In this document: piece after piece, positions 28,915 to 44,400 of the stretch
Numbering within the stretch: position 1 is the stretch's first letter
Layout: the number at the start of each line of letters is the position of its first letter
Virus record (IMG/VR): IMGVR_UViG_3300020473_001965
Span: 171,673 to 235,672 of that record
DNA length: 64,000 nucleotides
Reading direction: 5' to 3' (one strand)
The notes under the pieces: generated by a model
The model's input: only the letters and a program-made list of their open reading frames with translations
Databases searched by the model: none
Told to the model about the DNA's origin: nothing
Position numbers and translations under genes: made by a program

Positions 28915-29619
28915 CTAATTATCAAAGCTGTATTTGAAGTTACTTATTAAGTCTGAGAAACTATTGGTGACAATGTCATACGACTTATTTGTGTAGTACA
29001 CTCTGTAATCGTACTTAGACTTCCTAATGTCAGTTTTTAGTTTCGGTATATTTAATGGTCCTAATCCTATCATACCACATACCATAGAAAAGTCAACTTC
29101 TAGGTCCTCATATCTTATAATAAAATCTAGGGGTAATTCGTAAAAAAGTTTATATCTTGAAGTGAACCAATCAATGATTCGCTCTTGTTTTCCTGTTTTG
29201 CTAAACGAGGCATACGTCTCTAAAAAAGTTAAAAATTTATCTTGTAGCGTTTTTGACCCATCATGTTGATCTGGTTTTAAAATGTGATTAGTCAGTGTCG
29301 TATCAGGTGAATAAAATGACCACCAAAAATAACTCACAACTGCATCGTATGGATTTCTAATAGTTGTAAATTTAAAGTATTTGTCTATGTTCAGATTATT
29401 TCTCAAAACTTCGGTAGGTGGCGTATGTTGATGCCACACTGGCCTGTAGCCTAATCGATTATTTCTTTCATGATATCCCAAAGATTTTTCGCCATCATAA
29501 GGTGAACCTGTTAGAATATCGTCAGGTCCGCAAAAGGGTGTCATGGCAAGCTCAAGACTTGATCCTGCTGATTTCATTTGCTTAAAAAAGACAAAACTAT
29601 GTCTATGAGATAAAATCAT
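28915..29619 (-). CDS. sulfotransferase family protein (Sulfotransfer_2-like)
   Basis: 5'-PAPS loop FKQMKSAGSS, 3'-PAPS motif IRNPYDAVVS, DFIIRYEDL. Confidence 0.8.
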   Translation of the reverse strand: MILSHRHSFVFFKQMKSAGSSLELAMTPFCGPDDILTGSPYDGEKSLGYHERNNRLGYRPVWHQHTPPTEVLRNNLNIDKYFKFTTIRNPYDAVVSYFWWSFYSPDTTLTNHILKPDQHDGSKTLQDKFLTFLETYASFSKTGKQERIIDWFTSRYKLFYELPLDFIIRYEDLEVDFSMVCGMIGLGPLNIPKLKTDIRKSKYDYRVYYTNKSYDIVTNSFSDLISNFKYSFDN

Positions 29620-29663: not shown

Positions 29664-29695
29664 AAAACGGGCGCCCTTTTTAGGGGGCGCCCGTT
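29664..29695 (-). terminator. intrinsic terminator after major capsid gene
   Basis: AACGGGCGCCC...GGGCGCCCGTT stem with U-run on the minus strand. Confidence 0.88.
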
Positions 29696-29723: not shown

Positions 29724-31607
29724 TTAGATAATGTGCATATCCAAGCAGGTAACTGTACCGTAGAAGTCAGAACGAACCATCTTCTTGCCGTAGCGAGTCA
29801 TCACGCCCTTGCGGGGTGTGAAGTCTTCTGGCGCGAAGATAGTAGGAGTGACGATGAGCGGTACGTACGGAGCGTAGACGTATCCTGTCTCAAGGTATGA
29901 TCCGCCCTTGTATCCGACGAGGATCTTGTTGCGTGGGAAGTAAGGATCCTTGTAAACCGTGAAACGGTTTGAAAGGGAACCAACCTTCTCTGCACCAAGG
30001 CTCATTGGAGAGCTGACCTGACCTTGTCCGTCGAGGCTGTAGCTTGGCTTGTAGAGCACAGAGCTCTCAAGGATAGTAGCAACATCAGGACTGACAACGA
30101 TGAAGTTCGCAGAACCACGCAGGGTCTTTCTGTGAATGGTATTGGCAACGTCGATGATTGTCTCGACGAGAGTCTCGTACCATTCGCGGACCGTACCAGT
30201 GAAGGCTGGGCCGGCAGAAAGCGTGCTGGAAAGATCTACTTCATCTCCAGTATCCTTATCAACGAACTTACCAGGTGCACGTGACCAGTAAAGGTTAGCA
30301 CCATTTGCCTCTGTAAGGAGGTCGTTGAGGATCTCACGATCGAGCTCAAGAGCGATCTGCTCGGAGAGGATCTGAGTAAGCTCAACCTCAGCATCCATGC
30401 TGTGGTAAGCGTTCAGGTCCTGAGCAAGCTCTGGAGACCAGCGAGCGCGCAACTTACGTGTAGCTGCGGTAACTGCGATGGACTCGATCTTGATGTCGAT
30501 CTCAGGGATGACTGGGCTTGGGGTGCCTGTTCCGAAGTTGGATTCGAAAGCTGGAATAGTAAGCGTGTCACCCTGATCAGCGTTAGCTGAAAGGCTAGGA
30601 CCGATTACCCAAGAAACATCAGCTGCACCAGCAGGAACTGATCCACCGTCACTCAAAGCAAGAGCGAAGAGAACGTGTGTTCCACCTACAGGATCGTCGG
30701 ACCAAGCTGAGCCTGTCCAGTCACCACGACGTGTAGCACGACGAAGGTTAAGAACACCGTTACCAGCCTGATACTTCTCGCCCCATGCTGAAACGTTGTT
30801 TGCCGTTGCGAAGTCTGTAATGGCAACCTGGTTAAGCATAGAAAGATCTGAACCAGAAAGCTGTCCGGTCTGAAGCATGCAGAATGCGACGTCAAGATCA
30901 CCATCATCAATTGCGCGACGAACCTGAGGATCGTAACCAAGATATTTGGCGTTAGAGCCTGAGAAGTCAGTCAGTGCAGCAACTGTGTGTGAAGCTGTCC
31001 ATGTCTTACCGTTGGATCCACCCCAAGCACCGAAAGCGTTCATAAGAGGAAGTGCTGAACCACTGTGAACTCTCGAGAAGCCGGTACCGGCGAGGTCGTA
31101 CATACCACCAGCTGCAAGTGATCCTGAACGGACGCCCTTACCGCGTGGGTTGTTATAGATTGACTGACCAGCTGCGTACGTAGAATCTGTGGTGCTGCGA
31201 CCAGGGCGATCTCCGCCAGGTTGATAGTCACCACCAACGTTGTTTCCGTAGGTGTAGTCAAGATAGAAGAGCAGTCCAGAAGGAAGGCTCATTGGCTGAA
31301 TTGAAACAAGCTCGTTTGCAACCAATCCACCGAAAACACGGCGAACGATTGGGAAAGCGATGTTCGTAAAGCCACGAATATCGTTTGATGTTGAAAGAGC
31401 ACCACCACCTGTAGACAGAGAGTTGGTCTCACGAAGAAGCTGAGCAGCCTGGTTCTCTAAAAGCATCGCCATGTTCTCGCGGTTTGTACCTTCGAGTCCA
31501 CGGAGAAGACCAGTTCTGTTCCACTTCTCTGTAAGCCTGTTACCCTCAGAGCCCATATGACGTGAGCGTATATCTTCGGTGAGCTGCTCTAATGTGAATT
31601 TACTCAT
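29724..31607 (-). CDS. gp23: major capsid protein, T4 gp23-type
   Basis: LVSIQPMSLPSGLLFYLDY, TRKLRARWSPELAQDLNAYH, EIALELDREIL, APYVPL, GVMTRY. Confidence 0.97.
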   Translation of the reverse strand: MSKFTLEQLTEDIRSRHMGSEGNRLTEKWNRTGLLRGLEGTNRENMAMLLENQAAQLLRETNSLSTGGGALSTSNDIRGFTNIAFPIVRRVFGGLVANELVSIQPMSLPSGLLFYLDYTYGNNVGGDYQPGGDRPGRSTTDSTYAAGQSIYNNPRGKGVRSGSLAAGGMYDLAGTGFSRVHSGSALPLMNAFGAWGGSNGKTWTASHTVAALTDFSGSNAKYLGYDPQVRRAIDDGDLDVAFCMLQTGQLSGSDLSMLNQVAITDFATANNVSAWGEKYQAGNGVLNLRRATRRGDWTGSAWSDDPVGGTHVLFALALSDGGSVPAGAADVSWVIGPSLSANADQGDTLTIPAFESNFGTGTPSPVIPEIDIKIESIAVTAATRKLRARWSPELAQDLNAYHSMDAEVELTQILSEQIALELDREILNDLLTEANGANLYWSRAPGKFVDKDTGDEVDLSSTLSAGPAFTGTVREWYETLVETIIDVANTIHRKTLRGSANFIVVSPDVATILESSVLYKPSYSLDGQGQVSSPMSLGAEKVGSLSNRFTVYKDPYFPRNKILVGYKGGSYLETGYVYAPYVPLIVTPTIFAPEDFTPRKGVMTRYGKKMVRSDFYGTVTCLDMHII

Positions 31608-31644: not shown

Positions 31645-33201
31645 TTACTTAAGACCTGCAAGCGTTGCCCAGCGATCAACTTCTGTATCAGATGCTGTCG
31701 ATGTAGCAGAGCGTGTTGGCCTAGATGAACCCACAGCCTTTCGAACTGTTGATTCGTTAATTGAACCACTTTTCTTCTTAGAAGAAATCGATTCTGTCAT
31801 TGTCTTGTAAAGCAGCTTGACTTCTCTTAAGCTTCTTGCATTATCCAGTGACTCGACGATCGAACGCATTTGGCGAGTCGATATATTCTTGTTCTGGAGA
31901 AGCTTATTTGCATAGAGTAACTTTGCATTGAAGAGATTCATCTCTTTCAACTGGGTCTGAAGTTCGTTAACAGCGTCAACTGCTTCAGAAAGCTGTCCCT
32001 GGAGATCACGATTCTTGCGTGACTCATTAACAACTGCAGCACGGAGTTTCTTGTTCTCTGCGTGCACGTTTAAATCTTTATCTGACATGGCAAGAGGATC
32101 TTTTCCTCGCTTGCCACCCCCGAAATCGTCTCCGGACTTGCCGGAACCTTTGCCACCGAACTGATCAGCCATGTCCTTAGCAATTCCCTTTACCTTCAAA
32201 AGGTCGGGAGCTTCACTGAGTGCTCTCATAGCAGCAATTTCTCGACGGAGCATTCCCTCGTCGATTTCAATCCATTCGTCATCATCGGTGTCTGCCTCTT
32301 GCATGTCACCTTCATGATGCATTTCTTCGCCTGCGTACATGGCTTCTTCGACTTCTTCCTCACCCCCTTCGTCGTCGCCTTCTACGTCTTCTTCGCCGGC
32401 TTCTTCGCCTAAAGCGTCTTTAAGTGCGGCAAGTAGCTCTTCAGCAGCATCAGGATCAAGTTCGAGGTCAACTGCCTCGCCTTCGTCTTCTACAGCTTCA
32501 TCGCCTGGTTCATCGAGGTCTTCAGCCTCATCTTCTTCGCCGCCTTCGTCTGGGGCGTCCAAGTCTAGATCTAAATCTTCATCAGCATCAGCTTCATCTT
32601 CGTCTTCCTCGAAGAGATTAAGCTCACTGAGGTCTAATTCGTAAAGAACTTCATCTTCCGAGCGTTTTGACATTTTGATAGTCTCCTTAATAATGGTGTC
32701 AAGTGTTAAAGATAGAGCGGTGTCTGCATCAGATGATCCATCACCTTCGACTATACGTATTAGCTGATCACGTAAAGTTTTTGCCTCTGATATAATATTA
32801 GAAGCAATTAATTCAAATTTTTCATAGACTGCATCATCTTTTTCTTCAATTGTATTATAAAGAACGGCTGCATCTCTAAATGATTCTATTAGGCTCTTTA
32901 GGGCAACCTTGCTTTCCCGGGTCAATTCTTTGTCATTGTCATCTTCTGTTATCGACGCCAAGACGTTTTCATCTACTTCAAAAAAAATGTCTTCGGATTC
33001 ATCTAATCCGAAGATTTCTGCCATGAAATCGTCACTTTCTAGATCTGATGTGCTTTGAGCCTCATCCAACAATTCTTTTTCAACTAATCGTTTTATCTGA
33101 GGTGTCATCGCTTCAATTATTGCTTTTTTAGCATTTGCTTCAGCTGCTTCTCTTAATTGCTTTGCTTCCGCAATTGCTTCTGTGTATAATGAGTTTGACA
33201 T
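31645..33201 (-). CDS. gp22: prohead core scaffold protein (gp22-like)
   Basis: very acidic, coiled-coil C-terminal region, immediately upstream of MCP. Confidence 0.7.
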   Translation of the reverse strand: MSNSLYTEAIAEAKQLREAAEANAKKAIIEAMTPQIKRLVEKELLDEAQSTSDLESDDFMAEIFGLDESEDIFFEVDENVLASITEDDNDKELTRESKVALKSLIESFRDAAVLYNTIEEKDDAVYEKFELIASNIISEAKTLRDQLIRIVEGDGSSDADTALSLTLDTIIKETIKMSKRSEDEVLYELDLSELNLFEEDEDEADADEDLDLDLDAPDEGGEEDEAEDLDEPGDEAVEDEGEAVDLELDPDAAEELLAALKDALGEEAGEEDVEGDDEGGEEEVEEAMYAGEEMHHEGDMQEADTDDDEWIEIDEGMLRREIAAMRALSEAPDLLKVKGIAKDMADQFGGKGSGKSGDDFGGGKRGKDPLAMSDKDLNVHAENKKLRAAVVNESRKNRDLQGQLSEAVDAVNELQTQLKEMNLFNAKLLYANKLLQNKNISTRQMRSIVESLDNARSLREVKLLYKTMTESISSKKKSGSINESTVRKAVGSSRPTRSATSTASDTEVDRWATLAGLK

Positions 33202-33230
33202 GAATGTACTTCCTATAACTGCAAGAGCCT

Positions 33231-33260
33231 GAATTTAATTATGTCTTAGAATTTAATTAT
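33231..33260 (-). promoter_or_regulatory. tandem ATAATTA motifs upstream of the scaffold-MCP genes
   Basis: 12 nt direct repeat GAATTTAATTAT (+ strand 33231-33242 and 33249-33260). Confidence 0.55.
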
Positions 33261-33282
33261 TCTGTACAAAATGTTAATTCAG

Positions 33283-33531
33283 CTAGCGAGAACGTTCTTT
33301 TCTTTGCCTTCTTATTGCCCTGTTTTTCTTTTCTCGCTTTTTTTGTGATTTTGTTTTGTGATACTCAGTCTTTTCAACGTAGATCTTAACAACCCTTTCT
33401 TTTTTACATTTCTTTATAAAACGTCGTATCAAAGCTTCAGAGTTATCGCCGCGGACAGGTGTTTTTCTACCTCGTCGTCGGGTCCGATTCAGATCATTTT
33501 CACTGACGGAAACGTTTGCTCCTTTTTTCAC
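33283..33531 (-). CDS. rpsU: ribosomal protein bS21 homolog
   Basis: VRGDNSEALIRRFIKKCKKERVVKIYVEKTEYHKTKSQKKREKKNRAIRR aligns with the bS21 core (E. coli [36 protein letters not shown]...); GTG start. Confidence 0.8.
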   Translation of the reverse strand: MKKGANVSVSENDLNRTRRRGRKTPVRGDNSEALIRRFIKKCKKERVVKIYVEKTEYHKTKSQKKREKKNRAIRRQRKERSR

Positions 33532-34134
33532 TTAAACCTCTTCATCAAATATAAACACTGGTTCATCTTCATCAAAAAGTATATCAACCAGCCTATACTT
33601 TCTAGGTCTTTTTTCATCTCTTGGAAGTTTTTGACCGGCGGCAAATGATCTCTTTGATGTTACCCCGCCACGGGGTGCATGTCCTGTTGTGTAACCTACG
33701 GGTGATACACCGCCTGTTGCGCCGCCGGCTTGTCTACCCTTGTACAGACCAGGCATTGGAGTAATAGAAACACCAGATGTTTCATTTACTGTGTTGTAAT
33801 TTTTTTCTGCACCCTGGTGTAGATCAAAACGAACTGAATGCCCTGAGAAACTTCCGTAGTCTCGACGCTTATACGGGTCTGAAGTTTTGTGTGTGAGGCT
33901 TACTTTGTTTTGAAGCTTCTTTTCCGTCTCTGGATCCAAGTCCTCGAGATCATCTTCTTCGCAAGACTCATCATCAAGGATGTCGGGTTCTCTATATGGA
34001 TATGTCCCTTGTTTTTGATAAACTTTAGGATTGCTAATGGTTCCATACCCTGACCCAGTTCTGGGGTCGGGCAAACTCATGGCTGCAGCCCTTATGTACT
34101 CTCGCAAAATTGGTTCATAAGGGCTGCCAGTCAT
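33532..34134 (-). CDS. hypothetical protein (head module)
   Basis: 200 aa, acidic patch and G-rich segments. Confidence 0.65.
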   Translation of the reverse strand: MTGSPYEPILREYIRAAAMSLPDPRTGSGYGTISNPKVYQKQGTYPYREPDILDDESCEEDDLEDLDPETEKKLQNKVSLTHKTSDPYKRRDYGSFSGHSVRFDLHQGAEKNYNTVNETSGVSITPMPGLYKGRQAGGATGGVSPVGYTTGHAPRGGVTSKRSFAAGQKLPRDEKRPRKYRLVDILFDEDEPVFIFDEEV

Positions 34135-34142
34135 CTAATTAA

Positions 34143-34634
34143 TTATTCTCCAGCCCTAGTACCAAGGCCGTAAGCTTTCAATGTGTGCTTAGCAATTCCT
34201 GCGGAAGATTCAGCAGGGATTCGAGAAGTAGCAGCTGGACCGGAGCCGAATTCGGATCCTGGGTCTGCAGGAGTGGGTCCTTCAGGCATGTCCTTGGCAT
34301 TCATGCTTCCCTCTCCTGGTGAAGCTAAGCCCGGAGTAAATGGTGTACTAGGAAGGCCGCCGCCTCCGGTGGCTACATCAGCAAAGTTTGGAGCATTAGT
34401 ATAATCTCTATCTTGCTCGCCGAAAGTATGACCACCATCATTAACAATAGCGCTAAGAAGAAGATCATCACCCTGTGCCTGGATGGAATCTCTTGTCAAA
34501 GTTCCGTTATGTATTGGCGAACCTGGGTAGGCTGTTTGTAAATTTTCCGTCCCGTGAGTCGAAAGTCCGGAGACACCGCCCTTTGCGAATTCGGATGAAA
34601 CATAATCAACTGTGTTTTGGTTGTGTGAAGGCAT
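34143..34634 (-). CDS. hypothetical P/G/S-rich protein (head module)
   Basis: 163 aa, AAGGA SD, ATATTTA motif at 34689-34683. Confidence 0.7.
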   Translation of the reverse strand: MPSHNQNTVDYVSSEFAKGGVSGLSTHGTENLQTAYPGSPIHNGTLTRDSIQAQGDDLLLSAIVNDGGHTFGEQDRDYTNAPNFADVATGGGGLPSTPFTPGLASPGEGSMNAKDMPEGPTPADPGSEFGSGPAATSRIPAESSAGIAKHTLKAYGLGTRAGE

Positions 34635-34734: not shown

Positions 34735-35175
34735 TTACCTTAATTTCTTCTCAGCAAAAGCTAGCGTTGCCCAATTACCAGCGCCATCAAATAGGTCTTC
34801 AATATTATTGTTAGAAACAACTTGTGCGGCTTGATCAGCTTGACCAGATGAGCCTGCAAGGGACATCATAGATCTCCTTGGGTCACTAGAGTCAGCGCCA
34901 TATTGTTCTTGAAGTGTTGTCCTGGCAGTATCAGCAAAAATTGCACTCATGACAGGATCATCTGTCATTGTTGAAGTGACTTCATTAACTTTCTTTCCAA
35001 ACGTCACATTGTCCAGCGCTGGTCGACGAGGAGTAGGTGAACCCTTGCGCCGTGAAACGCCTGATAGATTTTTTGATGATTGCAATGTTGCGGGTGCATT
35101 AATTCCTTCACTTAAGATCTCAACGAGACATTCCTTAACAATTCCCTTTAACATGCTTTTAGTCACTTTTGCCAT
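34735..35175 (-). CDS. hypothetical protein, N-terminus MAKVTKSMLKGIVKECLVEILSE
   Basis: ATG 35175 follows the upstream stop codon and has GGAGG nearby; preferred over track start 35208. Confidence 0.65.
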   Translation of the reverse strand: MAKVTKSMLKGIVKECLVEILSEGINAPATLQSSKNLSGVSRRKGSPTPRRPALDNVTFGKKVNEVTSTMTDDPVMSAIFADTARTTLQEQYGADSSDPRRSMMSLAGSSGQADQAAQVVSNNNIEDLFDGAGNWATLAFAEKKLR

Positions 35176-35176
35176 C

Positions 35177-35605
35177 TTAGCCAACGCCTCCAAGAATTGC
35201 TCTTGCAATAGACCCGGAAGTTGATCCAGTCAAAACTGGGAATTCTGCTGCCCGAATTCTAGTTAGACCTGCAATTATATTGAAAGATGCTGCAGTTGCA
35301 GAATCTTTAGTGAAATAAAGTGTCTTGCACCTCAACTCCATTCTAGGGGTGGTTTCCCCCGCCTTGACTACAAAATAATTTGCTGTATTGACACCTCTTG
35401 CTCCATTTGCAGTAAACCCTACGCGGAGACCTGCCGAACTAGAATTATAAACTGATATCCATCTAGTTACTTCTGGAAAGTCTAGACGTATTGGTACGTT
35501 TTGAGAAGTTACCTCACCTGCAGCAGAAGCTGTCACATAAGGCACTCCTGAAATTTGGTATTCAGGTACAAAATTAGCATTTGGACGTGGATTTTTTAAT
35601 GACAT
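35177..35605 (-). CDS. hypothetical beta-rich virion protein
   Basis: 142 aa ORF following the protease gene. Confidence 0.65.
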   Translation of the reverse strand: MSLKNPRPNANFVPEYQISGVPYVTASAAGEVTSQNVPIRLDFPEVTRWISVYNSSSAGLRVGFTANGARGVNTANYFVVKAGETTPRMELRCKTLYFTKDSATAASFNIIAGLTRIRAAEFPVLTGSTSGSIARAILGGVG

Positions 35606-35611
35606 AGTTCT

Positions 35612-36223
35612 TTACTCCCAATCCAAGATTTCATTGAATATTCTATCAACTTTGTCTGAGTTGTTAAAAAAGGCATCGAGGTCGGCCTCTGTTACAAGTT
35701 GTTTTCCTTCTCTCATAACAAATGCACCAGGTGTTGAAGGCTCAGAAACGAAATCCCAACAAATTAGCTGGAAATCATCTTGCACTACTTGATATTGACC
35801 TTGGCGCTTTGTTGAACCCACACCCCGAGAAGATATGCCTAACTTCACCCCAGATTCTACAAGGCTCTGGAGTATTTTTCCACAGGGTGTATCGAGAAGC
35901 TCCACAGAACCATAGACAACATCGCCCTCGAGATGAGCTTCCCTAATAATGTGAGAAACATTCTTGAGTTCAACCACAGAAGAATCTGGATGGTCACATT
36001 CTCCTAGTGCTCTATTTTCTTGAATAAATTTTTGATAATTTCTTAATTCTCTTTCGAGTATTGCTTTCGGGTATATTCTCCCATTTTGATTTACGGTCTC
36101 TGCTTTTTGAAGAATTCCTTTCAAAATAATTTTTCCATCATTAAGTTCTCGGGACTCTTTAATCATGTCAGGAGTGTAGTCAAAATTAGAGTAAGAATTT
36201 ATGACATGTAATTTTTTAGACAT
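35612..36223 (-). CDS. gp21: prohead core protease
   Basis: GILQKAETVNQNGRIYP, ALGECDHP, LGISSRGVGS, WDFVSEPSTPGAF. Confidence 0.95.
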   Translation of the reverse strand: MSKKLHVINSYSNFDYTPDMIKESRELNDGKIILKGILQKAETVNQNGRIYPKAILERELRNYQKFIQENRALGECDHPDSSVVELKNVSHIIREAHLEGDVVYGSVELLDTPCGKILQSLVESGVKLGISSRGVGSTKRQGQYQVVQDDFQLICWDFVSEPSTPGAFVMREGKQLVTEADLDAFFNNSDKVDRIFNEILDWE

Positions 36224-37052
36224 TTTCGTTCTCCAATTGATTGATCATGCTTAGAATCGTAAGAGACTTAGAGACTGTTTCGTCATTAATGTTGCTAAAA
36301 TCATGCTCGTTAATTTTAGTCAAAACTCTTTCAACTTTTGACATGACATATTCACTGTCTGTAGAGTAATTCTCAAGTGTTTGTTTTGCTTTAGATACCA
36401 ATCCTACAACATCGTCTTGTATAGCAGCAGGGTTGCCTGTGAAAACGTACTTTCTTAAAAGTGCTCTTTGGTCGCTGCTTAGATTTTTACCGTATCTATC
36501 ATTAAATTTTTCTGCCATTAGGCGCACGACAAAACTATCAACATCTTTCTTTTCGTCTATGTCAAACTCATCTGATCGCTTGTCTTCCAAAAGCCAAGAA
36601 GCTATTTTATCTTCATACTCTGCAAGGACTCGAAGATCTCCGGGAGACTCCCTTCTCCATTCATTCAGAACTGTCTGGACTGTTGCATAAAGTCGATAAT
36701 CATCGATCTTAGTCTTATAAACCTTTTCGGAGTCCAGTTGGTAATTTATTTCTCTTATTAAATTAGACTTTTCTTTATCTAACGCTTTTTCGTTTAGGGC
36801 GCTCGATGCTTTCTTTGCCTCGGATAAAATTGAATTTGCTACAGATTGGTTGCTCACAGTAGTTTCGATGAGTGATCTAAATAAACGATATTCTTTATAA
36901 ATCTCTGTGTTTGGGGCATAATATTTTCGAATTATCTTCGAGGCAATTTTTCGCTGCTTATCTCTTTTTTCAACTAAACATTCAGCTATGTACTTTACCA
37001 AGATTTCATAAATTACGCCTACATTTCTTTTTTTGTTGTGCGTTTTAGACAT
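36216..37052 (-). CDS. hypothetical protein between portal and protease (prohead core-associated by position)
   Basis: 278 aa helical ORF starting KTHNKKRNVGVIYEIL. Confidence 0.7.
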   Translation of the reverse strand: MSKTHNKKRNVGVIYEILVKYIAECLVEKRDKQRKIASKIIRKYYAPNTEIYKEYRLFRSLIETTVSNQSVANSILSEAKKASSALNEKALDKEKSNLIREINYQLDSEKVYKTKIDDYRLYATVQTVLNEWRRESPGDLRVLAEYEDKIASWLLEDKRSDEFDIDEKKDVDSFVVRLMAEKFNDRYGKNLSSDQRALLRKYVFTGNPAAIQDDVVGLVSKAKQTLENYSTDSEYVMSKVERVLTKINEHDFSNINDETVSKSLTILSMINQLENENV

Positions 37053-37070: not shown

Positions 37071-39077
37071 CTATTTGTCTTCGTCCTCGTGGGACTCATT
37101 TAGTATTACGGATGTGTTATTACTTATCTTTTCGCCCAAGTTTTTTATAACAGATCGGATCTCATTATTAAACTTTGCATTTTTATCAAGCTGAGAGTCG
37201 AAAAAATCATCTAAAAATCCATCAGCTTCTTTCATTGTAAGGCTTCCAATTCTAGCTAGCTCTGCCCCGGGTGTCCTTGATCGTTTATTTTCACCTGTTG
37301 CTGAGGCGCCTAAATCTATTGCTGGTACGCCTGTCTTTCCTGCGCGCCGGCGTCGGCGGTCATGACCTGTGACTTTTGAAGTAGGCTTTACTGGATTTTC
37401 ATCGTCTTCGTCATCGTCTTCGTCAAGTAAAAGATCATCGTCTTCGTCGTCGGCTTCATTAGCAATCATTTCTTCAAAAGTTTTTGAAGTTAAAAGGTCT
37501 GTTGTCCTCGGGGTGTAACCAGCTGTCTCTGTACCTGCGTCTTCGGGAGTTGGTTCATCTCCCCCTTCATCGCCGCCGCCGCCTTCGTCGCCGCCGCCGC
37601 CTCCGAAAATGTCGCCGCTTGGTGCTCCGAAGACACCACCGGGGGTGTCATCTGCTGCAGGTTCACCTTCGGCGGCGCCAGGAGGTTGAATCGATTCTAT
37701 CTCAAGCTCTCTTATCTTGTCTTGCTCTCTTCCCTCTTCGACTTCATCAATAGCTTCATCAGTTAAACCTATAATGTTTTTTCTAATCCATCTCTTGTCA
37801 ACAATACCTTCTGGTACTTGGCCGGCGATTTCCATTTTTGATCTAAACAGCTCTAGCTTTTGCTGCTGTGCTATTGTGCTTGGATTAGAAAGTCTAAGAT
37901 CAAAATCAATTAAGTCGTCACCGTCATAACCCTTTACATACAGTGTGATAATAGCAATCTTATTCAATTCGGCAATGATTGTTCGCTGAATCCTTGCAAT
38001 TGATCTTGAGAATCTTATATCTTCTTGAGCAAGAGTTGCTTTTGAAGAAAGAGCCTCATCGTAACCTAAGTAAGCTTTAGGGATTTTTAGTGCTGCAAAA
38101 AGCTTCTTCTGAACGTATTCAACATCGTTGATATCGTTTTGATTTGTTCCTCCTGCTAAAGTGTCAATTTTTGTCCCTGTTTCTGTACCACGCACTGGTA
38201 GAAAATAATCTTCATCAACAGAGAGTGGGTTATATCTCAAGTCAACTCGCCCAGTCTTTTTATCAACAACCTGACTTCTCTTGAGCGTCGTCTGAACTTG
38301 CTCCATATAGTTAGGGACTTCTTCAGGTGGGACGTTACCTACGTCAATGTAGAAAACTCTTCTTTCAGGTGATCTAATAACTCTATAAACAAGCATAGCA
38401 TCTTCAATAAGAATCAACTGCCTCCAGATTCGGCGGGCAGCTTCTAGAACTGATGATCCGTACGGTAAGAATGCATCGTTACCTAAAAGCCTAAAATGAG
38501 ATATTTGCCAGTTTTCAAGAATCTGGTTTCCTTGCGTTATCCATCGAAATCGCACTGCCATGGGGTCGTTAGGGTCGAAACCCTCTTCTCTCTCAAGCTC
38601 ATTTACTGGAATAGGGTACGCGTTAATTACCCCCTCGTCTGGATCTACATCATTAAACAAAAAGAAGTCGCCGTACTTGCATAAAGTTCTGACCCAAGAA
38701 GATAGATTAAAATCTACATTTATGACGTCATAAAAGAGTTCTTCAAGTATTCTCTGAATTTGAGGGTTTTCTGAATATATGTGAAGAACCCTTCCTTTTT
38801 CATCTGGGGCGGTAGACTCTTCTGAATATATGTCTAGAGCACTTGCAATTTCAGGCATATATTCCATTTCAGAAAAGTCTGCATATCTTGCAGTTCTATC
38901 ATATGACCCGTATGCGCTCATGGTATGAGAGTACACACCGCTTTGATTTCTCTTGAACGTGTCAAAAGGTGTATTCTTAGAAATAGTTTTGTATTTTTTT
39001 ACGCTTCTATTAACAGCAGGGCCTGACCTAAAAAGATTTGTCAGTCTCTTGAAAAGCGTTTTTTCGTCTTGCGCCAT
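37071..39077 (-). CDS. gp20: portal protein
   Basis: RRVFYIDVGN, EDYFLPVRG, IDTLAGG, KKLFAALKIPK; long acidic C-terminal extension. Confidence 0.95.
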   Translation of the reverse strand: MAQDEKTLFKRLTNLFRSGPAVNRSVKKYKTISKNTPFDTFKRNQSGVYSHTMSAYGSYDRTARYADFSEMEYMPEIASALDIYSEESTAPDEKGRVLHIYSENPQIQRILEELFYDVINVDFNLSSWVRTLCKYGDFFLFNDVDPDEGVINAYPIPVNELEREEGFDPNDPMAVRFRWITQGNQILENWQISHFRLLGNDAFLPYGSSVLEAARRIWRQLILIEDAMLVYRVIRSPERRVFYIDVGNVPPEEVPNYMEQVQTTLKRSQVVDKKTGRVDLRYNPLSVDEDYFLPVRGTETGTKIDTLAGGTNQNDINDVEYVQKKLFAALKIPKAYLGYDEALSSKATLAQEDIRFSRSIARIQRTIIAELNKIAIITLYVKGYDGDDLIDFDLRLSNPSTIAQQQKLELFRSKMEIAGQVPEGIVDKRWIRKNIIGLTDEAIDEVEEGREQDKIRELEIESIQPPGAAEGEPAADDTPGGVFGAPSGDIFGGGGGDEGGGGDEGGDEPTPEDAGTETAGYTPRTTDLLTSKTFEEMIANEADDEDDDLLLDEDDDEDDENPVKPTSKVTGHDRRRRRAGKTGVPAIDLGASATGENKRSRTPGAELARIGSLTMKEADGFLDDFFDSQLDKNAKFNNEIRSVIKNLGEKISNNTSVILNESHEDEDK

Positions 39078-39080
39078 TTT

Positions 39081-40703
39081 TTACTTCCACAACCAGTCAA
39101 AGTCAACCGGTATTTTATTGCTTGTTGTTTTATCTGCGTCCTTGTCAACGTCACTATTGCTTGTTGAAATTGGCATAAACGGATTAAGCCGATCAGTTAA
39201 ATGTCCAGTAACATTTTTATCTCGATATTGATTTCTAGTAAATTTCATTCCCTGGAGCATCGCTTTATTTAGTGCCATAGCATCTTTACTGTAATCGGAA
39301 GATGTGTCATAAAGCCAGACACCTATTGCCAAACTCATGACTAGATCATCATTATACCCTTTCATAGCTTGAGGTTTATTGTTTTTCCAAACGAAAGTCT
39401 TGAGTTCTTCATAAAGCCTGCTAGAGTAGATCTTTATTTCTTTGTTTCTTAGGACTTCTTCAAGCTTTGTAAGTATTTGATTTCTAGATTTTCTTTGTGT
39501 ATCAAAGCCGGCTTTGTCTGTGTCATACCCAGGCGTGTAAGCGCCGATATAAACAGACTTTCTGTTTCGATAATAAAGTTTCGGATAATTTAACTCTTTT
39601 AATTTTAAAATTGTTGCGTATCCGAACGAATTGTTTTCAGGAACCATTAACGCATTATTATATTTTGTTCCCCAATCGAATAGTAATTGTGCAAATCTAT
39701 CAGGAGGTATTTTTCCTTTATATTCAGCTACAATCTCAGCAGTTGCTGTATCAAGTATGTGAAAAGTTGAAAAATCTTTTGCATCTCCTCTAGCAATATC
39801 TGCAGACACAATATATTGATGTGCGCTCAAAGGCTGTTTCCAAACCCAAACGCACCGTGCCGGACCGTCTCGAAATGAAGGTGCTTGAATCATGTTTGCA
39901 ACCCATTCGATATCCTCGTTGGTCAAGAATGTTTCACCTGAAGATGCGAAATCGCAGTTTAGCTCTTGAGCTATCTGCCTTTTTGTCATATTGCTGGTTT
40001 CTTTTTTGAACCAGTCGTCATCGCGCTCTGGGTGGACGTCCCAAGGTAACGTTATAGGATTAAAATCATTTAGATTATCCAATGCATCTGTGTACAATTT
40101 ATGGTACTGTCCACCTACTCCATTGGGTGTTGATAAGATTACAGCGCGTCCACCAGTAGATAGTGTAGGATATAACCCCATCCACAATTCATCAAAGTTT
40201 CTAACAAATGCGGCCTCATCGATAATCAAAAGTGAAAGAGCTTCAGATCGGCCGGCGTCGTCTGATGTGGGTATCGCTTTTATTGAAGATCCGTGACTAA
40301 ATTCTATAGACTGCTTATTGTCTGCAACTATCTCAGGCAGTATCAACCACTTGGGTAACGACCTTATTAAGACTTTAACTTTTCTAATAAAGTTTTGAGC
40401 GACTGCAAGTTTTGTCGCAATGATTAGAATATTTTTATCTTTATGAAAGAGGGCTAACCACGCTGCGTAAGATGCAGTTAATGTTGATAGGCCTAATTGT
40501 CTTGCTTTAACTACTACATTAAATCTGTGATTTATAAAATCTTGAACACAATCATCTTGGAAGTCAAACGTCTTGAATGGTATTAAGCCCCTAGTAGGGT
40601 GCTGGATCTTAACGTACTTGTTGAAAAAGTATTTTGGATCTTTACCACACTTAATAATTTCTTTGACTTGGTAGTTTTTAGATGGTTGCTTACTAGCCGG
40701 CAT
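39081..40703 (-). CDS. gp17: terminase large subunit
   Basis: KARQLGLST Walker A, LLIIDEAAF Walker B, STPNG, nuclease ADIARG...DFS and NDDLVMS. Confidence 0.96.
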   Translation of the reverse strand: MPASKQPSKNYQVKEIIKCGKDPKYFFNKYVKIQHPTRGLIPFKTFDFQDDCVQDFINHRFNVVVKARQLGLSTLTASYAAWLALFHKDKNILIIATKLAVAQNFIRKVKVLIRSLPKWLILPEIVADNKQSIEFSHGSSIKAIPTSDDAGRSEALSLLIIDEAAFVRNFDELWMGLYPTLSTGGRAVILSTPNGVGGQYHKLYTDALDNLNDFNPITLPWDVHPERDDDWFKKETSNMTKRQIAQELNCDFASSGETFLTNEDIEWVANMIQAPSFRDGPARCVWVWKQPLSAHQYIVSADIARGDAKDFSTFHILDTATAEIVAEYKGKIPPDRFAQLLFDWGTKYNNALMVPENNSFGYATILKLKELNYPKLYYRNRKSVYIGAYTPGYDTDKAGFDTQRKSRNQILTKLEEVLRNKEIKIYSSRLYEELKTFVWKNNKPQAMKGYNDDLVMSLAIGVWLYDTSSDYSKDAMALNKAMLQGMKFTRNQYRDKNVTGHLTDRLNPFMPISTSNSDVDKDADKTTSNKIPVDFDWLWK

Positions 40704-41131: not shown

Positions 41132-41434
41132 TTAAAACTTTAAGTCTGCAATCGATATCTTTCTATTCTGCAGATCTTTCTCGACCACATCTTTTGGTGG
41201 GCGTGCACCTGAAAGCCATGCGTCTCTATCTAAATATGCATAATTTACTTCACAATTTGAACAGCACTTGCTATTATTATAAGACTCTAAGTCAAGTGTA
41301 GAATTAAACATTACATCACACACTGGACACTCTGCAGGTAGAATCATTATTTTCTTTTTTGGTTTTATAATAGTAAGGCCGTCAGAATTAATTCTGTATT
41401 TCCTGTCTTTATCCAAAGATTTCCATTGCATCAT
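41132..41434 (-). CDS. hypothetical protein with CxxC...CxxC motif
   Basis: CPVC and CSNC; coupled to the sbcCD stop codon. Confidence 0.6.
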   Translation of the reverse strand: MMQWKSLDKDRKYRINSDGLTIIKPKKKIMILPAECPVCDVMFNSTLDLESYNNSKCCSNCEVNYAYLDRDAWLSGARPPKDVVEKDLQNRKISIADLKF

Positions 41435-44400
41435 TACTCCACAAAAACATAAGAGTCTTTACTCTTTCTTGTAATATCAATTACATTGTCAACAACATCT
41501 TTAACTGCGTCTACGTGAGATATTACTAAAATATGATGAAACCATTTTTTCAAAGATTCAAGAAGTCTATTGCAAGCCTCTACGTTCATTTCATCTAGCG
41601 CCCCAAATCCTTCATCAATAATCAAAAGATCAGTCTTTGGCAAAGACGAAACATTGATAAGTGCAACTCTAATTGCCAAAGACGCCATCATCTTCTCCAT
41701 TCCTGAAGCCAACTCTATTACACGCTTAGAATCTCCGTAATTAATGTATATGTCCATCTGATTTGAATTCTTATCTGCCTCTAGTTCTACTGTAAAACCT
41801 ACGACTCCCTGAAGAATTTTTGCAATCTCAGAATTAATAGAAGGTAGTTGTGACATGATTATTTGAAGCGGTATACCTTTTTTCGACATTGCATTGTTGA
41901 AAAGATCGTATATTTTTAACTTCTTTTTTAAGTCAATGAATTTTTCTTTCTCTTCTTTTAAGGAATTTAGATTGCTTTCCATCTTGCCGACAGATTCTGC
42001 CAGCGATATCCTCAAAGAGTCAGAGTTGTTTATTTTTTCTGTTAACTCTTCTATTTTTGTTTTTAACTCCAAGAGTTTTTCATCTACAGATATATCAAGT
42101 ACCTTTGACTCCAAATCTGAGAGTGTTTCTTTTGCAACTACTAGTTTCTCTCTCTTGTTTTTCAATGCGCTCGCATTATTCTTCTTTTTAAACTTTAAGT
42201 CATTTCTTTCAGACTTTAGCTCGACTTCTTGTTGCAATACCTTGTTGTATTTAGAAAGTTTTTCTTCGAGCTTCTCTTCTTTAAAAAGTTCTATTGCCTT
42301 CTCTGTCGCCTCAAATTGACCTTCTAGTGTTTCAATTAGCTCTCTTTGACTCCCTATCTTTAATTTGCTCTTGTGAGAGTCTTTTATAAACTTGCATGTA
42401 GGAAAAGAATCTCCGCATGGTACTTCAGACAGATGCTTTACAGACTTTTCTTGATTAGATAGTCGTGTTTTCTCTTTATCAAGTGTTGCTTTGATTTCTA
42501 TGAAACTAGTTTCAACTTGACGCTGCTCCCTAATCCTCTGATTAAGATCTTCACGAGAAAACAAGCCCTGAAAATTTTCTATCTTTTTAAGCTTTTCATC
42601 GACATGCTTAATCTCTAAGTCAAGTTCGCTGTTCTTATTTTCTAAATCTAGAATATCCTCTTCGATTCTTGTGGTCAATTTTTTCTGTGAATCTACGTCA
42701 TGATGCGTTACTACATCGGCATCATCAAACTTTGACAGAGATAATTTTAAATCTTGAAGCTTTGCTCTGTCTGTGTCTATTCGAAGCTGTGTTTTAACAA
42801 TCTGCTCTCTTTTCTTATCTAGTGATTGTTTAACATCATAAATGGCTACATCCCAATCTCGATCTGGAACATTTTTCAAAGCACTCTGAAGGTCTCTTGA
42901 CTCTTCTTTTGACGAATCCAGCATTTTTTCGAAGATTTCTAGGTCAAGAAACTTGGTAAGAATCATTTTTCTTGATGTCGCCCGCTCTCTAATGAAATTA
43001 TTCATCTGGCCTTGGGACGCCAAAGACGTCATAAGAAAGTCATCAGCAGTCCCCAAAAGTCTGCGCAGAACTTTTTCTGTTTCTCTACGCTGTTCTTCTG
43101 TCATGTCTTGAATCATCTCGCCATCGAGCCCGGTTCGATAGAAATTTAAGTGAGTTGTAGCATTAACTTGACCGCTTCTATTTTGATGCTTGACTGATTG
43201 GCGCTCTGTCCTATAGTTTTTACCATTTATTCCCAAGTCTATTTCTACCTTGCAATGACCTTTTCTACTATTAATGACATGAACGTTTTTAATTGGGCCT
43301 CGATCTGTAGTGTTGTAAAGGCCGTACATCAATGTTCCGATGATTGATGATTTTCCAGATCTATTTTTTCCAAATATTCCCGTAATTCCCGGCAGTGTCT
43401 CAAAGTTTATATAGTTTCCTTTGCCATATCCAAAAACATTGTCAAACTTCATAGACTTGATAGACCACTTTGTGTTTCTAGTAACGGCCGTGTCAAAAAC
43501 GGCTGCTTGGCTATGCTTTGAAACCAAATCTTCAAGAGTTTTCCACTCGTCTTCTTTTAAGACCGCACCTTTGTAATACTCTTTCATCAATAATTGAAGT
43601 GTCTTTTCGGATCGCAAATCTTTAATTGCACTACCTTCTTTGGAAGTTCTTAAAGATGTCTCACCAAAGTCGACGTCATATTTGTATACGATTTCTGTAG
43701 CTTCTTTAACATGTTTCAACTCTGAATGCAGATGAACGATATCGGTTTGATTTATTTGGTTTTCAGATTTTACTCGAAATCTTGCTCCATCTGGGTGCTT
43801 TCTTGCTTCTTCCATCGTGTCAGGAACATTTCCCTTCCACTCGATTGTGACAAAGGGCATGGTGTGGTGTACTTCATAAAACTTACTAGTATACTCATCT
43901 TTAGATTTAATATCCCAAAATAAAAACCCTTTACCCGGATCTTCACCGTAGTTTTGCTGAATTGTTGAGCCGCAATAAGCTATGCGTTTTTCATCGTCGA
44001 GATATTGCATCTTGTGGATATCGCCCAACAGTGCAAATTCATATTCATCAAAAAAACTAGTCTTTACTTCACCTTCGATGTTCCAGTTAATATCAGTCTT
44101 TGATCCTAAAACACCGCCGTGAAAAAGTGCGATATTAACGTCTCCCGGAACAGGTTTGACAGATTCCCAGTTTTCTTCATCAAAACAAGAAAAGACGCAC
44201 CAATTAAATCCTGCAACGCCTGTTGGGTATGTTCCTGACTTTTTATATAGATAAATGTTCGGATTATTCAAGGCTTTGACAATAGGTGTTATTGCGTCTT
44301 GCCGATCTTTGTTTAAAATCAGACCGTCATGATTACCTAAGATAACATGTGTAGGAGCAATTTCAGCAAGACCCTGGAACCACCAGGACAAAACATCTAT

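What the first reader, a model, noticed from the sequence alone, without database searches (positions are those of the whole stretch)
33283..33531. Phage bS21 with a basic insertion, embedded in the head operon, in a genome mixing strong-SD late genes and leaderless early genes
Seen: bS21 core preceded by an extra ~15-aa Arg-rich segment (SENDLNRTRRRGRKTP); located between protease and scaffold; virion genes carry strong SDs (AGGAG/AGGAGA) while several non-virion genes look leaderless. Known: bS21 is reported in large phages near structural genes, contacts the anti-SD region and supports SD-led initiation; S21-deficient ribosomes still translate leaderless mRNA. Inference: late-expressed bS21 reprogrammes ribosomes toward phage SD-led mRNAs, and the insertion may add an rRNA/mRNA contact.
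Basis: partly seen in the sequence, partly recalled or inferred. Interest (0 to 1): 0.62.

Follow-up and report, generated by a model that had tools for sequence, protein, structure and literature searches.

The report
Phage ribosomal protein bS21 with basic loop
A large marine T4-like phage carries its own copy of the small ribosomal protein bS21 inside its head-assembly operon, a known habit of such phages; what is new is a 12-20 residue arginine-rich loop inserted near the protein's front end.

Summary
The ORF at 33283-33531 (- strand, 82 aa) is real and is a bS21 homologue. Alone it scores just under the curated cut-offs, but 25 of 27 close relatives match PF01165 and only bS21 chains match in the PDB. 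The Arg-rich segment is a true internal insertion between the N-terminal strand and helix 1: a loop of 20-28 aa against 8-9 aa in insertion-less relatives. It is fast-evolving, always basic, and carries an RRGRR-like core.

The gene lies in a co-directional T4-type head operon and is translationally coupled to the ORF upstream. All 80 related viral contigs examined keep bS21 in this operon. So do the cultured Microcystis phage Mel-JY01 and a 484-kb phage. No bacterial species genome holds this bS21 type.

bS21 beside the prohead protease and capsid gene, late expression, and the ribosome-takeover idea are already published (Chen 2022, Mizuno 2019).

The claimed split between strong-SD late genes and leaderless early genes is not supported: SD motifs occur in 52% of window ORFs against 40% elsewhere (p = 0.15). 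About 7-11 leaderless candidates are a weak signal (p about 0.01).

Verdict: a known kind of phage gene with an undescribed loop insertion whose function is untested.

The parts
33283..33531 (-). Phage bS21 gene, 82 aa, GTG start
   Evidence: ORF. PF01165 and TIGR00030 matches just under cut-off. All PDB hits are bS21. 25/27 clade members match PF01165. AF2 model has helices at 30-55 and 61-81, mean pLDDT 77.
33451..33501 (-). Codons of the arginine-rich loop insertion (residues about 11-27) between strand 1 and helix 1
   Evidence: Alignments A1/A2 against insertion-less relatives. Loop 20-28 aa against 8-9 aa, 7-10 K/R, net charge +2 to +4. Low-confidence, mostly coil in the AF2 model. dN 0.40 against 0.056 in the core.
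33529..33540 (-). Translational coupling junction: GAGG (33537-33540), TAA stop of the upstream ORF (33532-33534), GTG start (33529-33531)
   Evidence: Sequence. GTG or TTG start with a GAGG-type SD recurs in all insertion-clade loci.
33532..34134 (-). p200: unknown, largely low-complexity protein with a conserved acidic C-terminal tail; coupled to bS21
   Evidence: No Pfam, PHROG or NCBIfam family. Homologues found only in insertion-bearing loci, including the locus of P0037.
34143..34634 (-). p163: unknown G/P/S-rich protein, specific to the sub-lineage
   Evidence: An RNA-library contig with 2 differences lies at 34362-34535.
34735..35208 (-). p157: unknown head-operon protein (start uncertain, TTG 35208 or ATG 35175)
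   Evidence: Weak PHROG 5035 match. Homologue sits next to bS21 in L006.
35177..35605 (-). p142: unknown conserved head-operon protein
   Evidence: Homologues in most of the 80 viral loci, usually just after bS21.
35612..36223 (-). Prohead core serine protease (T4 gp21 type)
   Evidence: PF03420 E 3.4e-27; PHROG 207 E 2.7e-51.
36216..37052 (-). p278: conserved unknown protein between portal and protease
   Evidence: Homologues in nearly all related loci.
37071..39077 (-). T4-type portal (gp20)
   Evidence: PF07230 E 6.4e-76.
39081..40703 (-). Large terminase
   Evidence: PF03237 E 1.7e-15.
33202..33282 (-). Conserved spacer between bS21 and the scaffold gene; holds ATAATTAAATTC twice; possible internal promoter for scaffold and capsid genes
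   Evidence: The motif is not enriched across the window.
31645..33201 (-). Acidic 518-aa scaffold-like protein
   Evidence: Position and composition. Homologues precede the capsid gene in related loci. RNA-library contigs with 0-1 differences lie on it.
29724..31607 (-). Major capsid protein, gp23 type
   Evidence: PF07068 E 7.7e-77. AGGAG SD. RNA-library contigs lie on it.
29666..29695 (-). Strong hairpin terminator that closes the head operon
   Evidence: 11-13 bp stem with 9 GC pairs, followed by a T-run.

Best explanation
This is a phage-encoded homologue of bacterial ribosomal protein bS21. It belongs to a phage-specific bS21 lineage that has been inherited vertically inside the head-morphogenesis operon of a large group of T4-like, mostly marine, myoviruses.

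Expression (inferred): it is transcribed with the head genes (protease, four unknown ORFs, bS21, scaffold, capsid, terminator). It is translated by coupling to the ORF upstream from a GTG start.

Most likely action (inferred from published work on other phage bS21 proteins): the protein exchanges into host 30S subunits at the normal bS21 site on the platform, next to uS11 and the 3' end of 16S rRNA. There it supports initiation when virion proteins are made in bulk.

The sub-lineage's special feature (shown): a disordered, arginine-rich loop with an RRGRR-like core, 12-20 residues longer than normal, lies directly before helix 1. The C-terminal tail is short and lacks an RLY/KLY head anchor.

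Most likely role of the loop (inferred): an extra electrostatic RNA contact, with 16S rRNA or with mRNA just 5' of the SD duplex. This would raise the phage protein's hold on the ribosome relative to the easily exchanged host bS21.
For: - Family: only bS21 is matched in Pfam, NCBIfam and the PDB. 25/27 clade members hit PF01165, best E 1.6e-12. AF2 gives the two-helix bS21 architecture.
- Purifying selection: core dN is 0.056 while dS is saturated, query against L002.
- Insertion: internal, always basic, found in every member of a mostly monophyletic clade that includes clusters diverged beyond 50% identity.
- Operon: co-directional genes; the scan found no terminator-like site in or flanking the bS21 gene (the one weak - strand site in the stretch, 32990-33014, lies inside the scaffold ORF), and the only strong hairpin comes after the capsid gene.
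- Coupling junction.
- Synteny: kept in all 80 IMG/VR loci, in Microcystis phage Mel-JY01 (annotated RpsU) and in LR756508.
- No bacterial counterpart among 185,579 species genomes.
- Host uses SD: 42% of ORFs carry an SD motif against 7% at control ATGs.
- Not the Bacteroidia ASD-sequestering type: no aromatic residue in the C-terminal helix (sequence).
- Literature: a phage bS21 enters E. coli ribosomes (PMC6375957). Phage bS21 is expressed late with structural genes (PMC9723584). bS21 props up the anti-SD, and phage homologues may touch mRNA 5' of the SD helix (PMC7550191, PMC10491246).
- Complex prediction with E. coli uS11: weak support. Score 0.44, best of 3 controls 0.00. The mark was reached by 58 of 80 solved complexes and 2 of 110 mismatched pairs, but at 0.60 or under by only 7 of those 80 and by both mismatches that passed. 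Runs agree in at least 87% of contacts; partner pLDDT at least 59. This may reflect memory of the known bS21-uS11 complex.
Against: - The protein's own Pfam and NCBIfam scores are below the curated cut-offs.
- Foldseek found no significant structural match.
- No RNA-library contig covers the bS21 gene itself, although the capsid, scaffold and p163 genes are covered.
- The host is unknown. Ribosome binding, late timing and any effect of the loop were not tested here.
- The E. coli bS21 Arg35 that contacts uS11 aligns with Thr55, which is near-invariant in the clade. The docking may therefore differ.
- The HTVC008M bS21 made E. coli ribosomes nearly inactive in vitro (PMC6375957). Boosting translation is thus not an established outcome.
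Confidence: 0.5

Rival explanations
1. Plain supplement, neutral loop. The phage bS21 simply tops up or replaces host bS21, a loosely bound protein that is often sub-stoichiometric. The arginine-rich loop is a tolerated low-complexity expansion with no specific contact.
For: The loop evolves about 7 times faster than the core (dN 0.40 against 0.056). Its length varies from 20 to 28 aa. AF2 gives it low confidence. 76 of 80 related viral loci manage without it.
Against: Across more than 30 sequences and several clusters diverged beyond 50% identity, the loop never loses its 7-10 K/R residues or its RRGRR-like core. Other family members independently carry basic N-terminal extensions (L036, L076, L094). 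This suggests selection for added positive charge at this end.
Confidence: 0.22
2. Packaged cargo. bS21 is made with the prohead core proteins, enclosed in the capsid and delivered with the DNA, so that it acts on ribosomes from the onset of infection. p200, with its acidic tail, might serve as partner or adaptor. Chen et al. 2022 raised this possibility for phage bS21 in general.
For: The gene sits among prohead-core-like ORFs between protease and scaffold in every related locus. It is translationally coupled to p200. p200 has a conserved acidic C-terminal tail and occurs only where the insertion occurs. The protein is extremely basic, like capsid-internal DNA-binding proteins.
Against: There is no conserved T4-type targeting or cleavage motif: the V-S-E after the N-terminal strand is not kept in P0019 or P0021. 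The core is under strong constraint on residues typical of bS21. No virion proteome is available.
Confidence: 0.13
3. Early genes are leaderless and do not need bS21. Late genes have strong SDs. Late phage bS21 therefore shifts ribosomes from leaderless to SD-led initiation.
For: bS21-free E. coli ribosomes handle leaderless lambda cI mRNA well, and bS21 supports the anti-SD (PMC10491246). Some SD-less ORFs have a -10-like hexamer 5-7 nt before the start codon: 7 against 2.4 expected with long spacers, p = 0.013. Abundant virion genes have AGGAG.
Against: SD frequency does not differ significantly between the virion module and the rest (52% against 40%, p = 0.15; strong SDs 23% against 16%, p = 0.21). 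Leaderless candidates make up under 4% of ORFs, and 5 of the 16 were stop-codon artefacts. One good candidate (28915-29619) lies in the late module. No transcription start data exist.
Confidence: 0.1
4. Exapted nucleic-acid binder. The protein no longer works on the ribosome and serves as a DNA-condensing or RNA-chaperone protein during head filling.
For: Scores are below the family cut-offs. The Arg that contacts uS11 in E. coli is replaced by Thr. There is no C-terminal RLY/KLY anchor (sequence). The lineage has no bacterial counterpart.
Against: The hallmark helix-1 and helix-2 motifs of bS21 are invariant or nearly so. Insertion-less members score up to E 1.6e-12 on PF01165. Another phage bS21 does enter ribosomes (PMC6375957).
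Confidence: 0.05

Closest known systems
bS21 of freshwater Bacteroidetes-infecting myophages (Chen et al. 2022, PMC9723584)
   Same: A phage bS21 a few genes from the prohead protease, portal, terminase and capsid genes in large myovirus genomes with tRNAs. It is proposed to act late on host ribosomes. That paper also reports the protease within 10 genes of bS21 in 310 of 900 published bS21 phages.
   Different: In those phages bS21 lies on the opposite strand from the structural genes, GC is 31-34%, the habitat is fresh water and the hosts are SD-blind Bacteroidetes. An aromatic residue is kept at the Tyr54 position. Here the gene is co-directional and translationally coupled, GC is 43% and the source is marine. 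SD motifs are common, the C-terminal helix has no aromatic residue, and there is a loop insertion which that paper does not describe.
RpsU of Microcystis phage Mel-JY01 (PP395634), and the bS21 of uncultured 484-kb phage LR756508
   Same: Same operon order on one strand: protease, short ORF, bS21, further ORFs, gp23-type capsid gene. The capsid proteins are 35-38% identical to the query's.
   Different: Their bS21 proteins pass the Pfam cut-off (44.9 and 40.4 bits). The Mel-JY01 protein has no arginine-rich loop; the LR756508 protein was not examined for one.
bS21 of pelagiphage HTVC008M (Mizuno et al. 2019, PMC6375957)
   Same: A marine T4-like myophage bS21. It is the only phage bS21 shown experimentally to enter 70S ribosomes.
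   Different: That protein is 54% identical to its host's bS21 and looks recently captured. The lineage here has no close bacterial counterpart and looks vertically inherited among phages.
bS21 paralogues of Francisella tularensis (PMC9578407)
   Same: Alternative bS21 versions create heterogeneous ribosomes that favour subsets of mRNAs. This is the functional model that a phage bS21 would follow.
   Different: Those are cellular paralogues, with no insertion and no link to virion genes.
Lineage-specific bS21 extensions: the RLY/KLY C-terminus of Gamma- and Betaproteobacteria (PMC7550191) and the chloroplast bS21c C-terminal extension (bioRxiv 10.64898/2026.07.03.736309)
   Same: Add-ons to the two-helix core make extra contacts around the mRNA exit and anti-SD region.
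   Different: Those are C-terminal and contact h37/A1167 or uS7. Here the add-on is an internal loop before helix 1, and the C-terminus is short.
Arginine-rich RNA-binding motifs, such as lambda N and HIV Tat/Rev peptides (from my own knowledge, not tested)
   Same: A short disordered stretch dominated by Arg, with an RRxRR core.
   Different: No cognate RNA element was found or searched for systematically. The likeness is in composition only.

Membership tests
Ribosomal protein bS21 (Pfam PF01165 / NCBIfam TIGR00030) | The protein's own score reaches the curated family cut-off | tested here: not met
   23.4 bits against 27. 22.6 bits against 28.95. The six-frame search gives 26.4 bits, 27.3 with neighbours in the frame. 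The shortfall comes from the insertion splitting the N-terminal strand from the core: the profile aligns only to residues 26-77.
Ribosomal protein bS21 (Pfam PF01165 / NCBIfam TIGR00030) | Homology to the family through close relatives and profiles, with no competing family | tested here: met
   25 of 27 clade members hit PF01165 at E <= 0.01, best 1.6e-12, and no other family appears. The query is 46-54% identical to insertion-less P0027-P0029, which carry PF01165. The clade profile hits only bS21 chains in the PDB.
Ribosomal protein bS21 (Pfam PF01165 / NCBIfam TIGR00030) | Short N-terminal strand followed by two long basic helices | tested here: inconclusive
   AF2 gives helices at 30-55 and 61-81, mean pLDDT 77. 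Foldseek against the PDB gave no significant match; the top row is a S. aureus ribosome chain at E 7. The N-terminal strand is not modelled as a strand.
Ribosomal protein bS21 (Pfam PF01165 / NCBIfam TIGR00030) | Binds the 30S platform next to uS11 and the 3' end of 16S rRNA | tested here: inconclusive
   Complex prediction with E. coli uS11 gives weak support: score 0.44, best control 0.00, with the tool's caveats. Real binding needs ribosome biochemistry.
Bacteroidia-type, ASD-sequestering bS21 | Aromatic residue at the Tyr54 position in the C-terminal helix, stacking on A1534 (PMC7797042, PMC9723584) | tested here: not met
   Residues 61-82 hold no Tyr, Phe, Trp or His (sequence). I judged this by inspection, because no F. 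johnsoniae sequence was available from a tool for a residue-level alignment.
Gamma/Betaproteobacterial-type bS21 | C-terminal RLY or KLY motif contacting h37/A1167 (PMC7550191) | tested here: not met
   The protein ends soon after helix 2 with no such motif. Some insertion-less relatives end in K-L/M-F-R.
Head-operon bS21 of T4-like phages (synteny group defined here) | bS21 lies between the S77 prohead protease and the scaffold/gp23 genes, on the same strand | tested here: met
   Seen in the window, in L002-L008, in all 80 IMG/VR loci, in Mel-JY01 and in LR756508.
T4-type capsid-targeted internal proteins | N-terminal targeting peptide ending in a conserved (L/I)-x-E protease site (from my own knowledge of T4) | tested here: not met
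   V-S-E follows the N-terminal strand in the query but is L-D-D or L-S-D in P0019 and P0021. The strand itself is the ordinary bS21 N-terminus.

The most novel reading that the evidence does not exclude
In this sub-lineage three novelties arose together between protease and scaffold: p163, the acidic-tailed p200, and the arginine-rich bS21 loop. They may form one module. Either p200 escorts the loop-bearing bS21 into the prohead for delivery at infection, or the loop recognises a specific element in phage late mRNA leaders. The second case would make ribosomes mRNA-selective rather than merely SD-competent.
Probability: 0.1. Interest if true: 0.75.

Novelty: new variant of a known kind. Interest (0 to 1): 0.33.

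Why it matters
Phage bS21 is the commonest virus-encoded ribosomal protein, yet its function in infection is still unproven.

This locus adds two usable facts. First, a large phage-only bS21 lineage has stayed fixed inside the head operon of T4-like marine phages. It has no counterpart in 185,579 bacterial species genomes, which points to a long-standing phage function rather than repeated recent capture from hosts. Second, a natural pair of forms exists, with and without a 12-20 residue arginine-rich loop beside the helix that covers the anti-SD. Comparing the two is a ready-made experiment on how bS21 add-ons affect ribosome occupancy and mRNA choice.

It does not change the general picture, and the proposed SD-versus-leaderless switch is not borne out by the genome.

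Tried and rejected
- Foldseek of the AF2 model against the PDB: nothing significant. A two-helix protein is a poor query.
- tblastn of the query bS21 against GenBank phages: only Agrobacterium phage Atu_ph07, at E = 2.
- tblastn of a canonical marine family member (L033) against GenBank phages: no match. The deposited relatives (Mel-JY01, LR756508) were found through the capsid protein and a Pfam scan instead.
- Host clue from bS21: the scan of one genome for each of 185,579 species found pattern matches but no relative. The 1.84-billion-protein profile search gave only 182 hits at E <= 0.001, without names. The host stays unknown; the runs only show a marine origin.
- Expression: contigs from three metatranscriptome libraries lie on the capsid, scaffold and p163 genes, but none lies on bS21. 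Contigs cannot show absence, strand or level.
- Late-promoter idea: the conserved CATAATTAA block in the bS21-scaffold spacer is not enriched in the window (35 matches against 24.8 +/- 4.7 expected).
- Leaderless peak: partly an artefact. TAA or TAG stop codons of upstream genes mimic -10 hexamers in 5 of 16 cases.
- SD dichotomy: rejected.
- dN/dS: dS is saturated, so only dN values are reported.
- A single origin of the insertion is not proven. P0037 groups with P0039 outside the main insertion clade, on a tree with few columns and many unresolved forks.
- No hibernation-factor gene (PF02482) in the phage genome.

Full report
**What is there.** It starts at a GTG that directly follows the TAA stop of the upstream ORF (33532-34134). 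A GAGG lies 5 nt before the GTG. The window is the last 64 kb of a 235,672-bp linear IMG/VR virus record, estimated 87% complete. Essentially every long ORF in the window lies on the - strand.

**Is it bS21?**
- Alone, the protein falls just short of the curated cut-offs: PF01165 23.4 bits against 27, TIGR00030 22.6 against 28.95.
- The six-frame search of the phage genome gives 26.4 bits, or 27.3 with neighbours in the frame.
- No other family competes, and every PDB sequence hit is a bS21 chain.
- The word search found 29 relatives. Of the 27 clean ones, 25 match PF01165 at E <= 0.01, best 1.6e-12.
- AlphaFold2 with that alignment gives a poorly ordered N-terminus (residues 1-29) and two long helices (30-55, 61-81), mean pLDDT 77. 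Foldseek found nothing significant for so small a fold.
- I take the homology as settled and ribosome binding as untested.

**The insertion.** Pfam aligns only residues 26-77, which makes the front look like an N-terminal extension. The family alignment shows otherwise.
- The query's ANVSVS is identical to the N-terminus of insertion-less relatives such as P0027. The G-D-N-S-E before helix 1 matches their G-E-S-T-E. The extra residues are therefore an internal insertion between strand 1 and helix 1.
- Canonical members have a loop of 8-9 residues with net charge about 0. The query's clade has 20-28 residues with 7-10 Lys/Arg and net charge +2 to +4. The pattern recurs: acidic start, then D-L, then an RRGRR-like core, then a polar/acidic tail.
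- The profile search of 1.84 billion representatives found similar loops in further clusters diverged beyond 50% identity: P0030, P0037, P0046, P0041, P0106.
- On a tree with few columns and many unresolved forks, the insertion-bearing sequences form one clade (support 87/72). The exception is P0037, which groups with P0039.
- Between the query and L002, dN is 0.40 in the front part against 0.056 in the core, with dS saturated. The core is strongly constrained. The loop changes fast but keeps its length class and charge.
- A few other family members carry basic N-terminal extensions instead (L036, L076, L094).
- The C-terminal tail is short, lacks the RLY/KLY motif, and has no aromatic residue (sequence).

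**Context.** The gene order on the - strand is:
- large terminase (PF03237) and T4 portal (PF07230);
- p278;
- S77 prohead protease;
- four unknown ORFs: p142, p157, p163, p200;
- bS21;
- a 518-aa acidic scaffold-like protein;
- the gp23-type capsid protein;
- a strong hairpin terminator at 29666-29695.

The scan lists no terminator-like site in or next to the bS21 gene, and no strong one between the protease and the end of the capsid gene; its one weak - strand site in that stretch (32990-33014) falls inside the scaffold ORF.

This order is identical in contigs from other samples and nearly so in a more distant one. A scan of IMG/VR with the family's conserved peptides returned 80 loci. All 80 show terminase/portal/p278/protease upstream of bS21, and scaffold plus capsid downstream where the contig reaches that far, on the same strand. 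Only four of the 80 (L015-L018) carry the insertion, and only those four have p163 and p200. P0037, another insertion-bearing form, also sits behind a p200 homologue. p200 has conserved motifs and a conserved acidic C-terminal tail.

The same scan over one genome for each of 185,579 bacterial and archaeal species found no relative. Among deposited phages, Microcystis phage Mel-JY01 has an annotated RpsU in the same place. The 484-kb uncultured phage LR756508 has a PF01165 match 2 kb upstream of its capsid gene. Flavobacterium phage immuto has none.

**Habitat and expression.** The stretch is held by marine and marine-plankton metagenomes from at least five studies. Contigs from three metatranscriptome libraries lie on the capsid gene, the capsid/scaffold junction, the scaffold gene and p163. 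None lies on bS21. This neither shows nor excludes bS21 expression.

**SD and leaderless claims.** I called 293 ORFs in the 235-kb genome with starts chosen without reference to SD motifs.
- An SD-like motif lies 3-12 nt upstream of 42% of starts, against 7% at internal in-frame ATGs. The host is therefore an SD user.
- Abundant virion genes have AGGAG at a constant spacing.
- The virion module does not differ significantly from the rest: 25/48 against 98/245 for any SD (p = 0.15), and 11/48 against 38/245 for strong SDs (p = 0.21).
- In SD-less ORFs there is a peak of -10-like hexamers ending 5-7 nt before the start, 16 against about 4 expected. Five of these are the upstream gene's stop codon.
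- With spacers of 40 nt or more the count is 7 against 2.4 expected, p = 0.013. A handful of leaderless genes is plausible but unproven, and they do not define an early class.

**What is already known.**
- Chen et al. 2022 (PMC9723584) described bS21 within the terminase-portal-protease-capsid region of large freshwater myophages. They showed late co-expression with structural genes. They found the prohead protease within ten genes of bS21 in 310 of 900 published bS21 phages. They proposed both ribosome takeover and possible packaging into virions.
- Mizuno et al. 2019 (PMC6375957) showed that the HTVC008M bS21 enters E. coli ribosomes.
- Watson et al. 2020 (PMC7550191) described the RLY/KLY anchor. 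They suggested that phage homologues may touch mRNA 5' of the SD helix.
- The lambda cI study (PMC10491246) shows that bS21 props up the anti-SD and that bS21-free ribosomes translate a leaderless mRNA.
- None of the papers I read or searched describes a loop insertion.

**Differences from the Chen phages.** The gene here is co-directional and translationally coupled. GC is 43%. The source is marine. SD motifs are frequent. No aromatic residue stands where Bacteroidia-type bS21 has Tyr54.

**Mechanism.**
- Shown: homology, the insertion and its conservation pattern, the operon position, the coupling, lineage-wide synteny, and the absence of bacterial counterparts.
- Inferred: late co-expression, exchange into host 30S subunits, and an extra electrostatic RNA contact made by the loop.
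- A complex prediction with E. coli uS11 gave only weak support: 0.44 against 0.00 for controls. The mark was reached by 58 of 80 solved complexes and 2 of 110 mismatched pairs, but at 0.60 or under by only 7 of those 80 and by both mismatches that passed. Runs agree in at least 87% of contacts and the partner's pLDDT is at least 59. The result may simply recall the known bS21-uS11 interface.
- E. coli bS21 Arg35, which contacts uS11, aligns with Thr55, near-invariant in the clade.

**Verdict.** This is a real but ordinary kind of phage gene, in a position already reported as typical. It carries an undescribed arginine-rich loop, confined to one sub-lineage, that co-occurs with two lineage-specific neighbour genes. 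The SD-versus-leaderless framing is not supported.

Noticed in passing
G000:C1:5354-5720 (- strand), outside the window; tRNAs at G000:C1 17896-98596: The phage genome encodes a one-piece tmRNA (tag ANNNYHYEQRLAA by ARAGORN) and 8 tRNAs: Thr, Leu, Met, Lys, Arg, Gly, Ser, Asn. The window itself has none. These are further translation-related genes alongside bS21.
   Followed up: no
window 28915-29619 (- strand): A sulfotransferase-family ORF (PF03567, 27.9 bits) sits directly after the capsid-gene terminator. It has no SD, a 104-nt spacer, and TATACT ending 7 nt before its ATG. It looks like a separately promoted, possibly leaderless, non-structural gene inside the virion module.
   Followed up: partly
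window 33202-33282: The spacer between bS21 and the scaffold gene is conserved in L002, L008 and L015-L017. It contains ATAATTAAATTC twice (33235-33261). It may be an internal promoter that boosts the scaffold and capsid genes. The motif is not enriched window-wide.
   Followed up: partly
window 33532-34634 (p200 and p163): These two low-complexity unknown proteins occur only in the sub-lineage whose bS21 has the insertion. p200 keeps several conserved motifs and an acidic C-terminal tail, and it is translationally coupled to bS21. It also precedes the distant insertion-bearing P0037.
   Followed up: partly
window 33529-33531; L002, L008, L011, L015-L017: Every insertion-clade bS21 gene starts with GTG or TTG behind a GAGG-type SD. 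Most insertion-less relatives use ATG. Genome-wide usage is 252 ATG, 26 GTG, 15 TTG. This may reflect throttled or regulated translation.
   Followed up: partly
window 41434-44571 (- strand): A 1045-aa ORF next to the terminase fuses a Metallophos nuclease domain with AAA_23 and SbcC/Rad50 Walker B domains. It is a single-chain Mre11-Rad50-like protein; T4 has two genes for this, gp47 and gp46 (the T4 comparison is from my own knowledge).
   Followed up: no
L019-L022, L024, L025, L028, L030, L035, L039, L043 (IMG/VR loci): One subgroup of insertion-less head-operon bS21 proteins ends in K-L/M-F-R. This resembles the KLY head-contact motif of Betaproteobacterial bS21 (PMC7550191). It could hint at their hosts.
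   Followed up: no
L036, L076, L094 (IMG/VR loci); P0053, P0068, P0084, P0136, P0163: Other members of the family, or of the wider bS21 hit list, carry long basic N-terminal extensions rich in Asn/Arg/Lys instead of a loop insertion. Positive charge seems to have been added at this end of bS21 more than once.
   Followed up: no
window 32339-32644 (+ strand): A 101-aa Ser-rich ORF on the + strand is the antisense shadow of the Glu/Asp-rich stretch of the scaffold gene. It is not a gene.
   Followed up: yes
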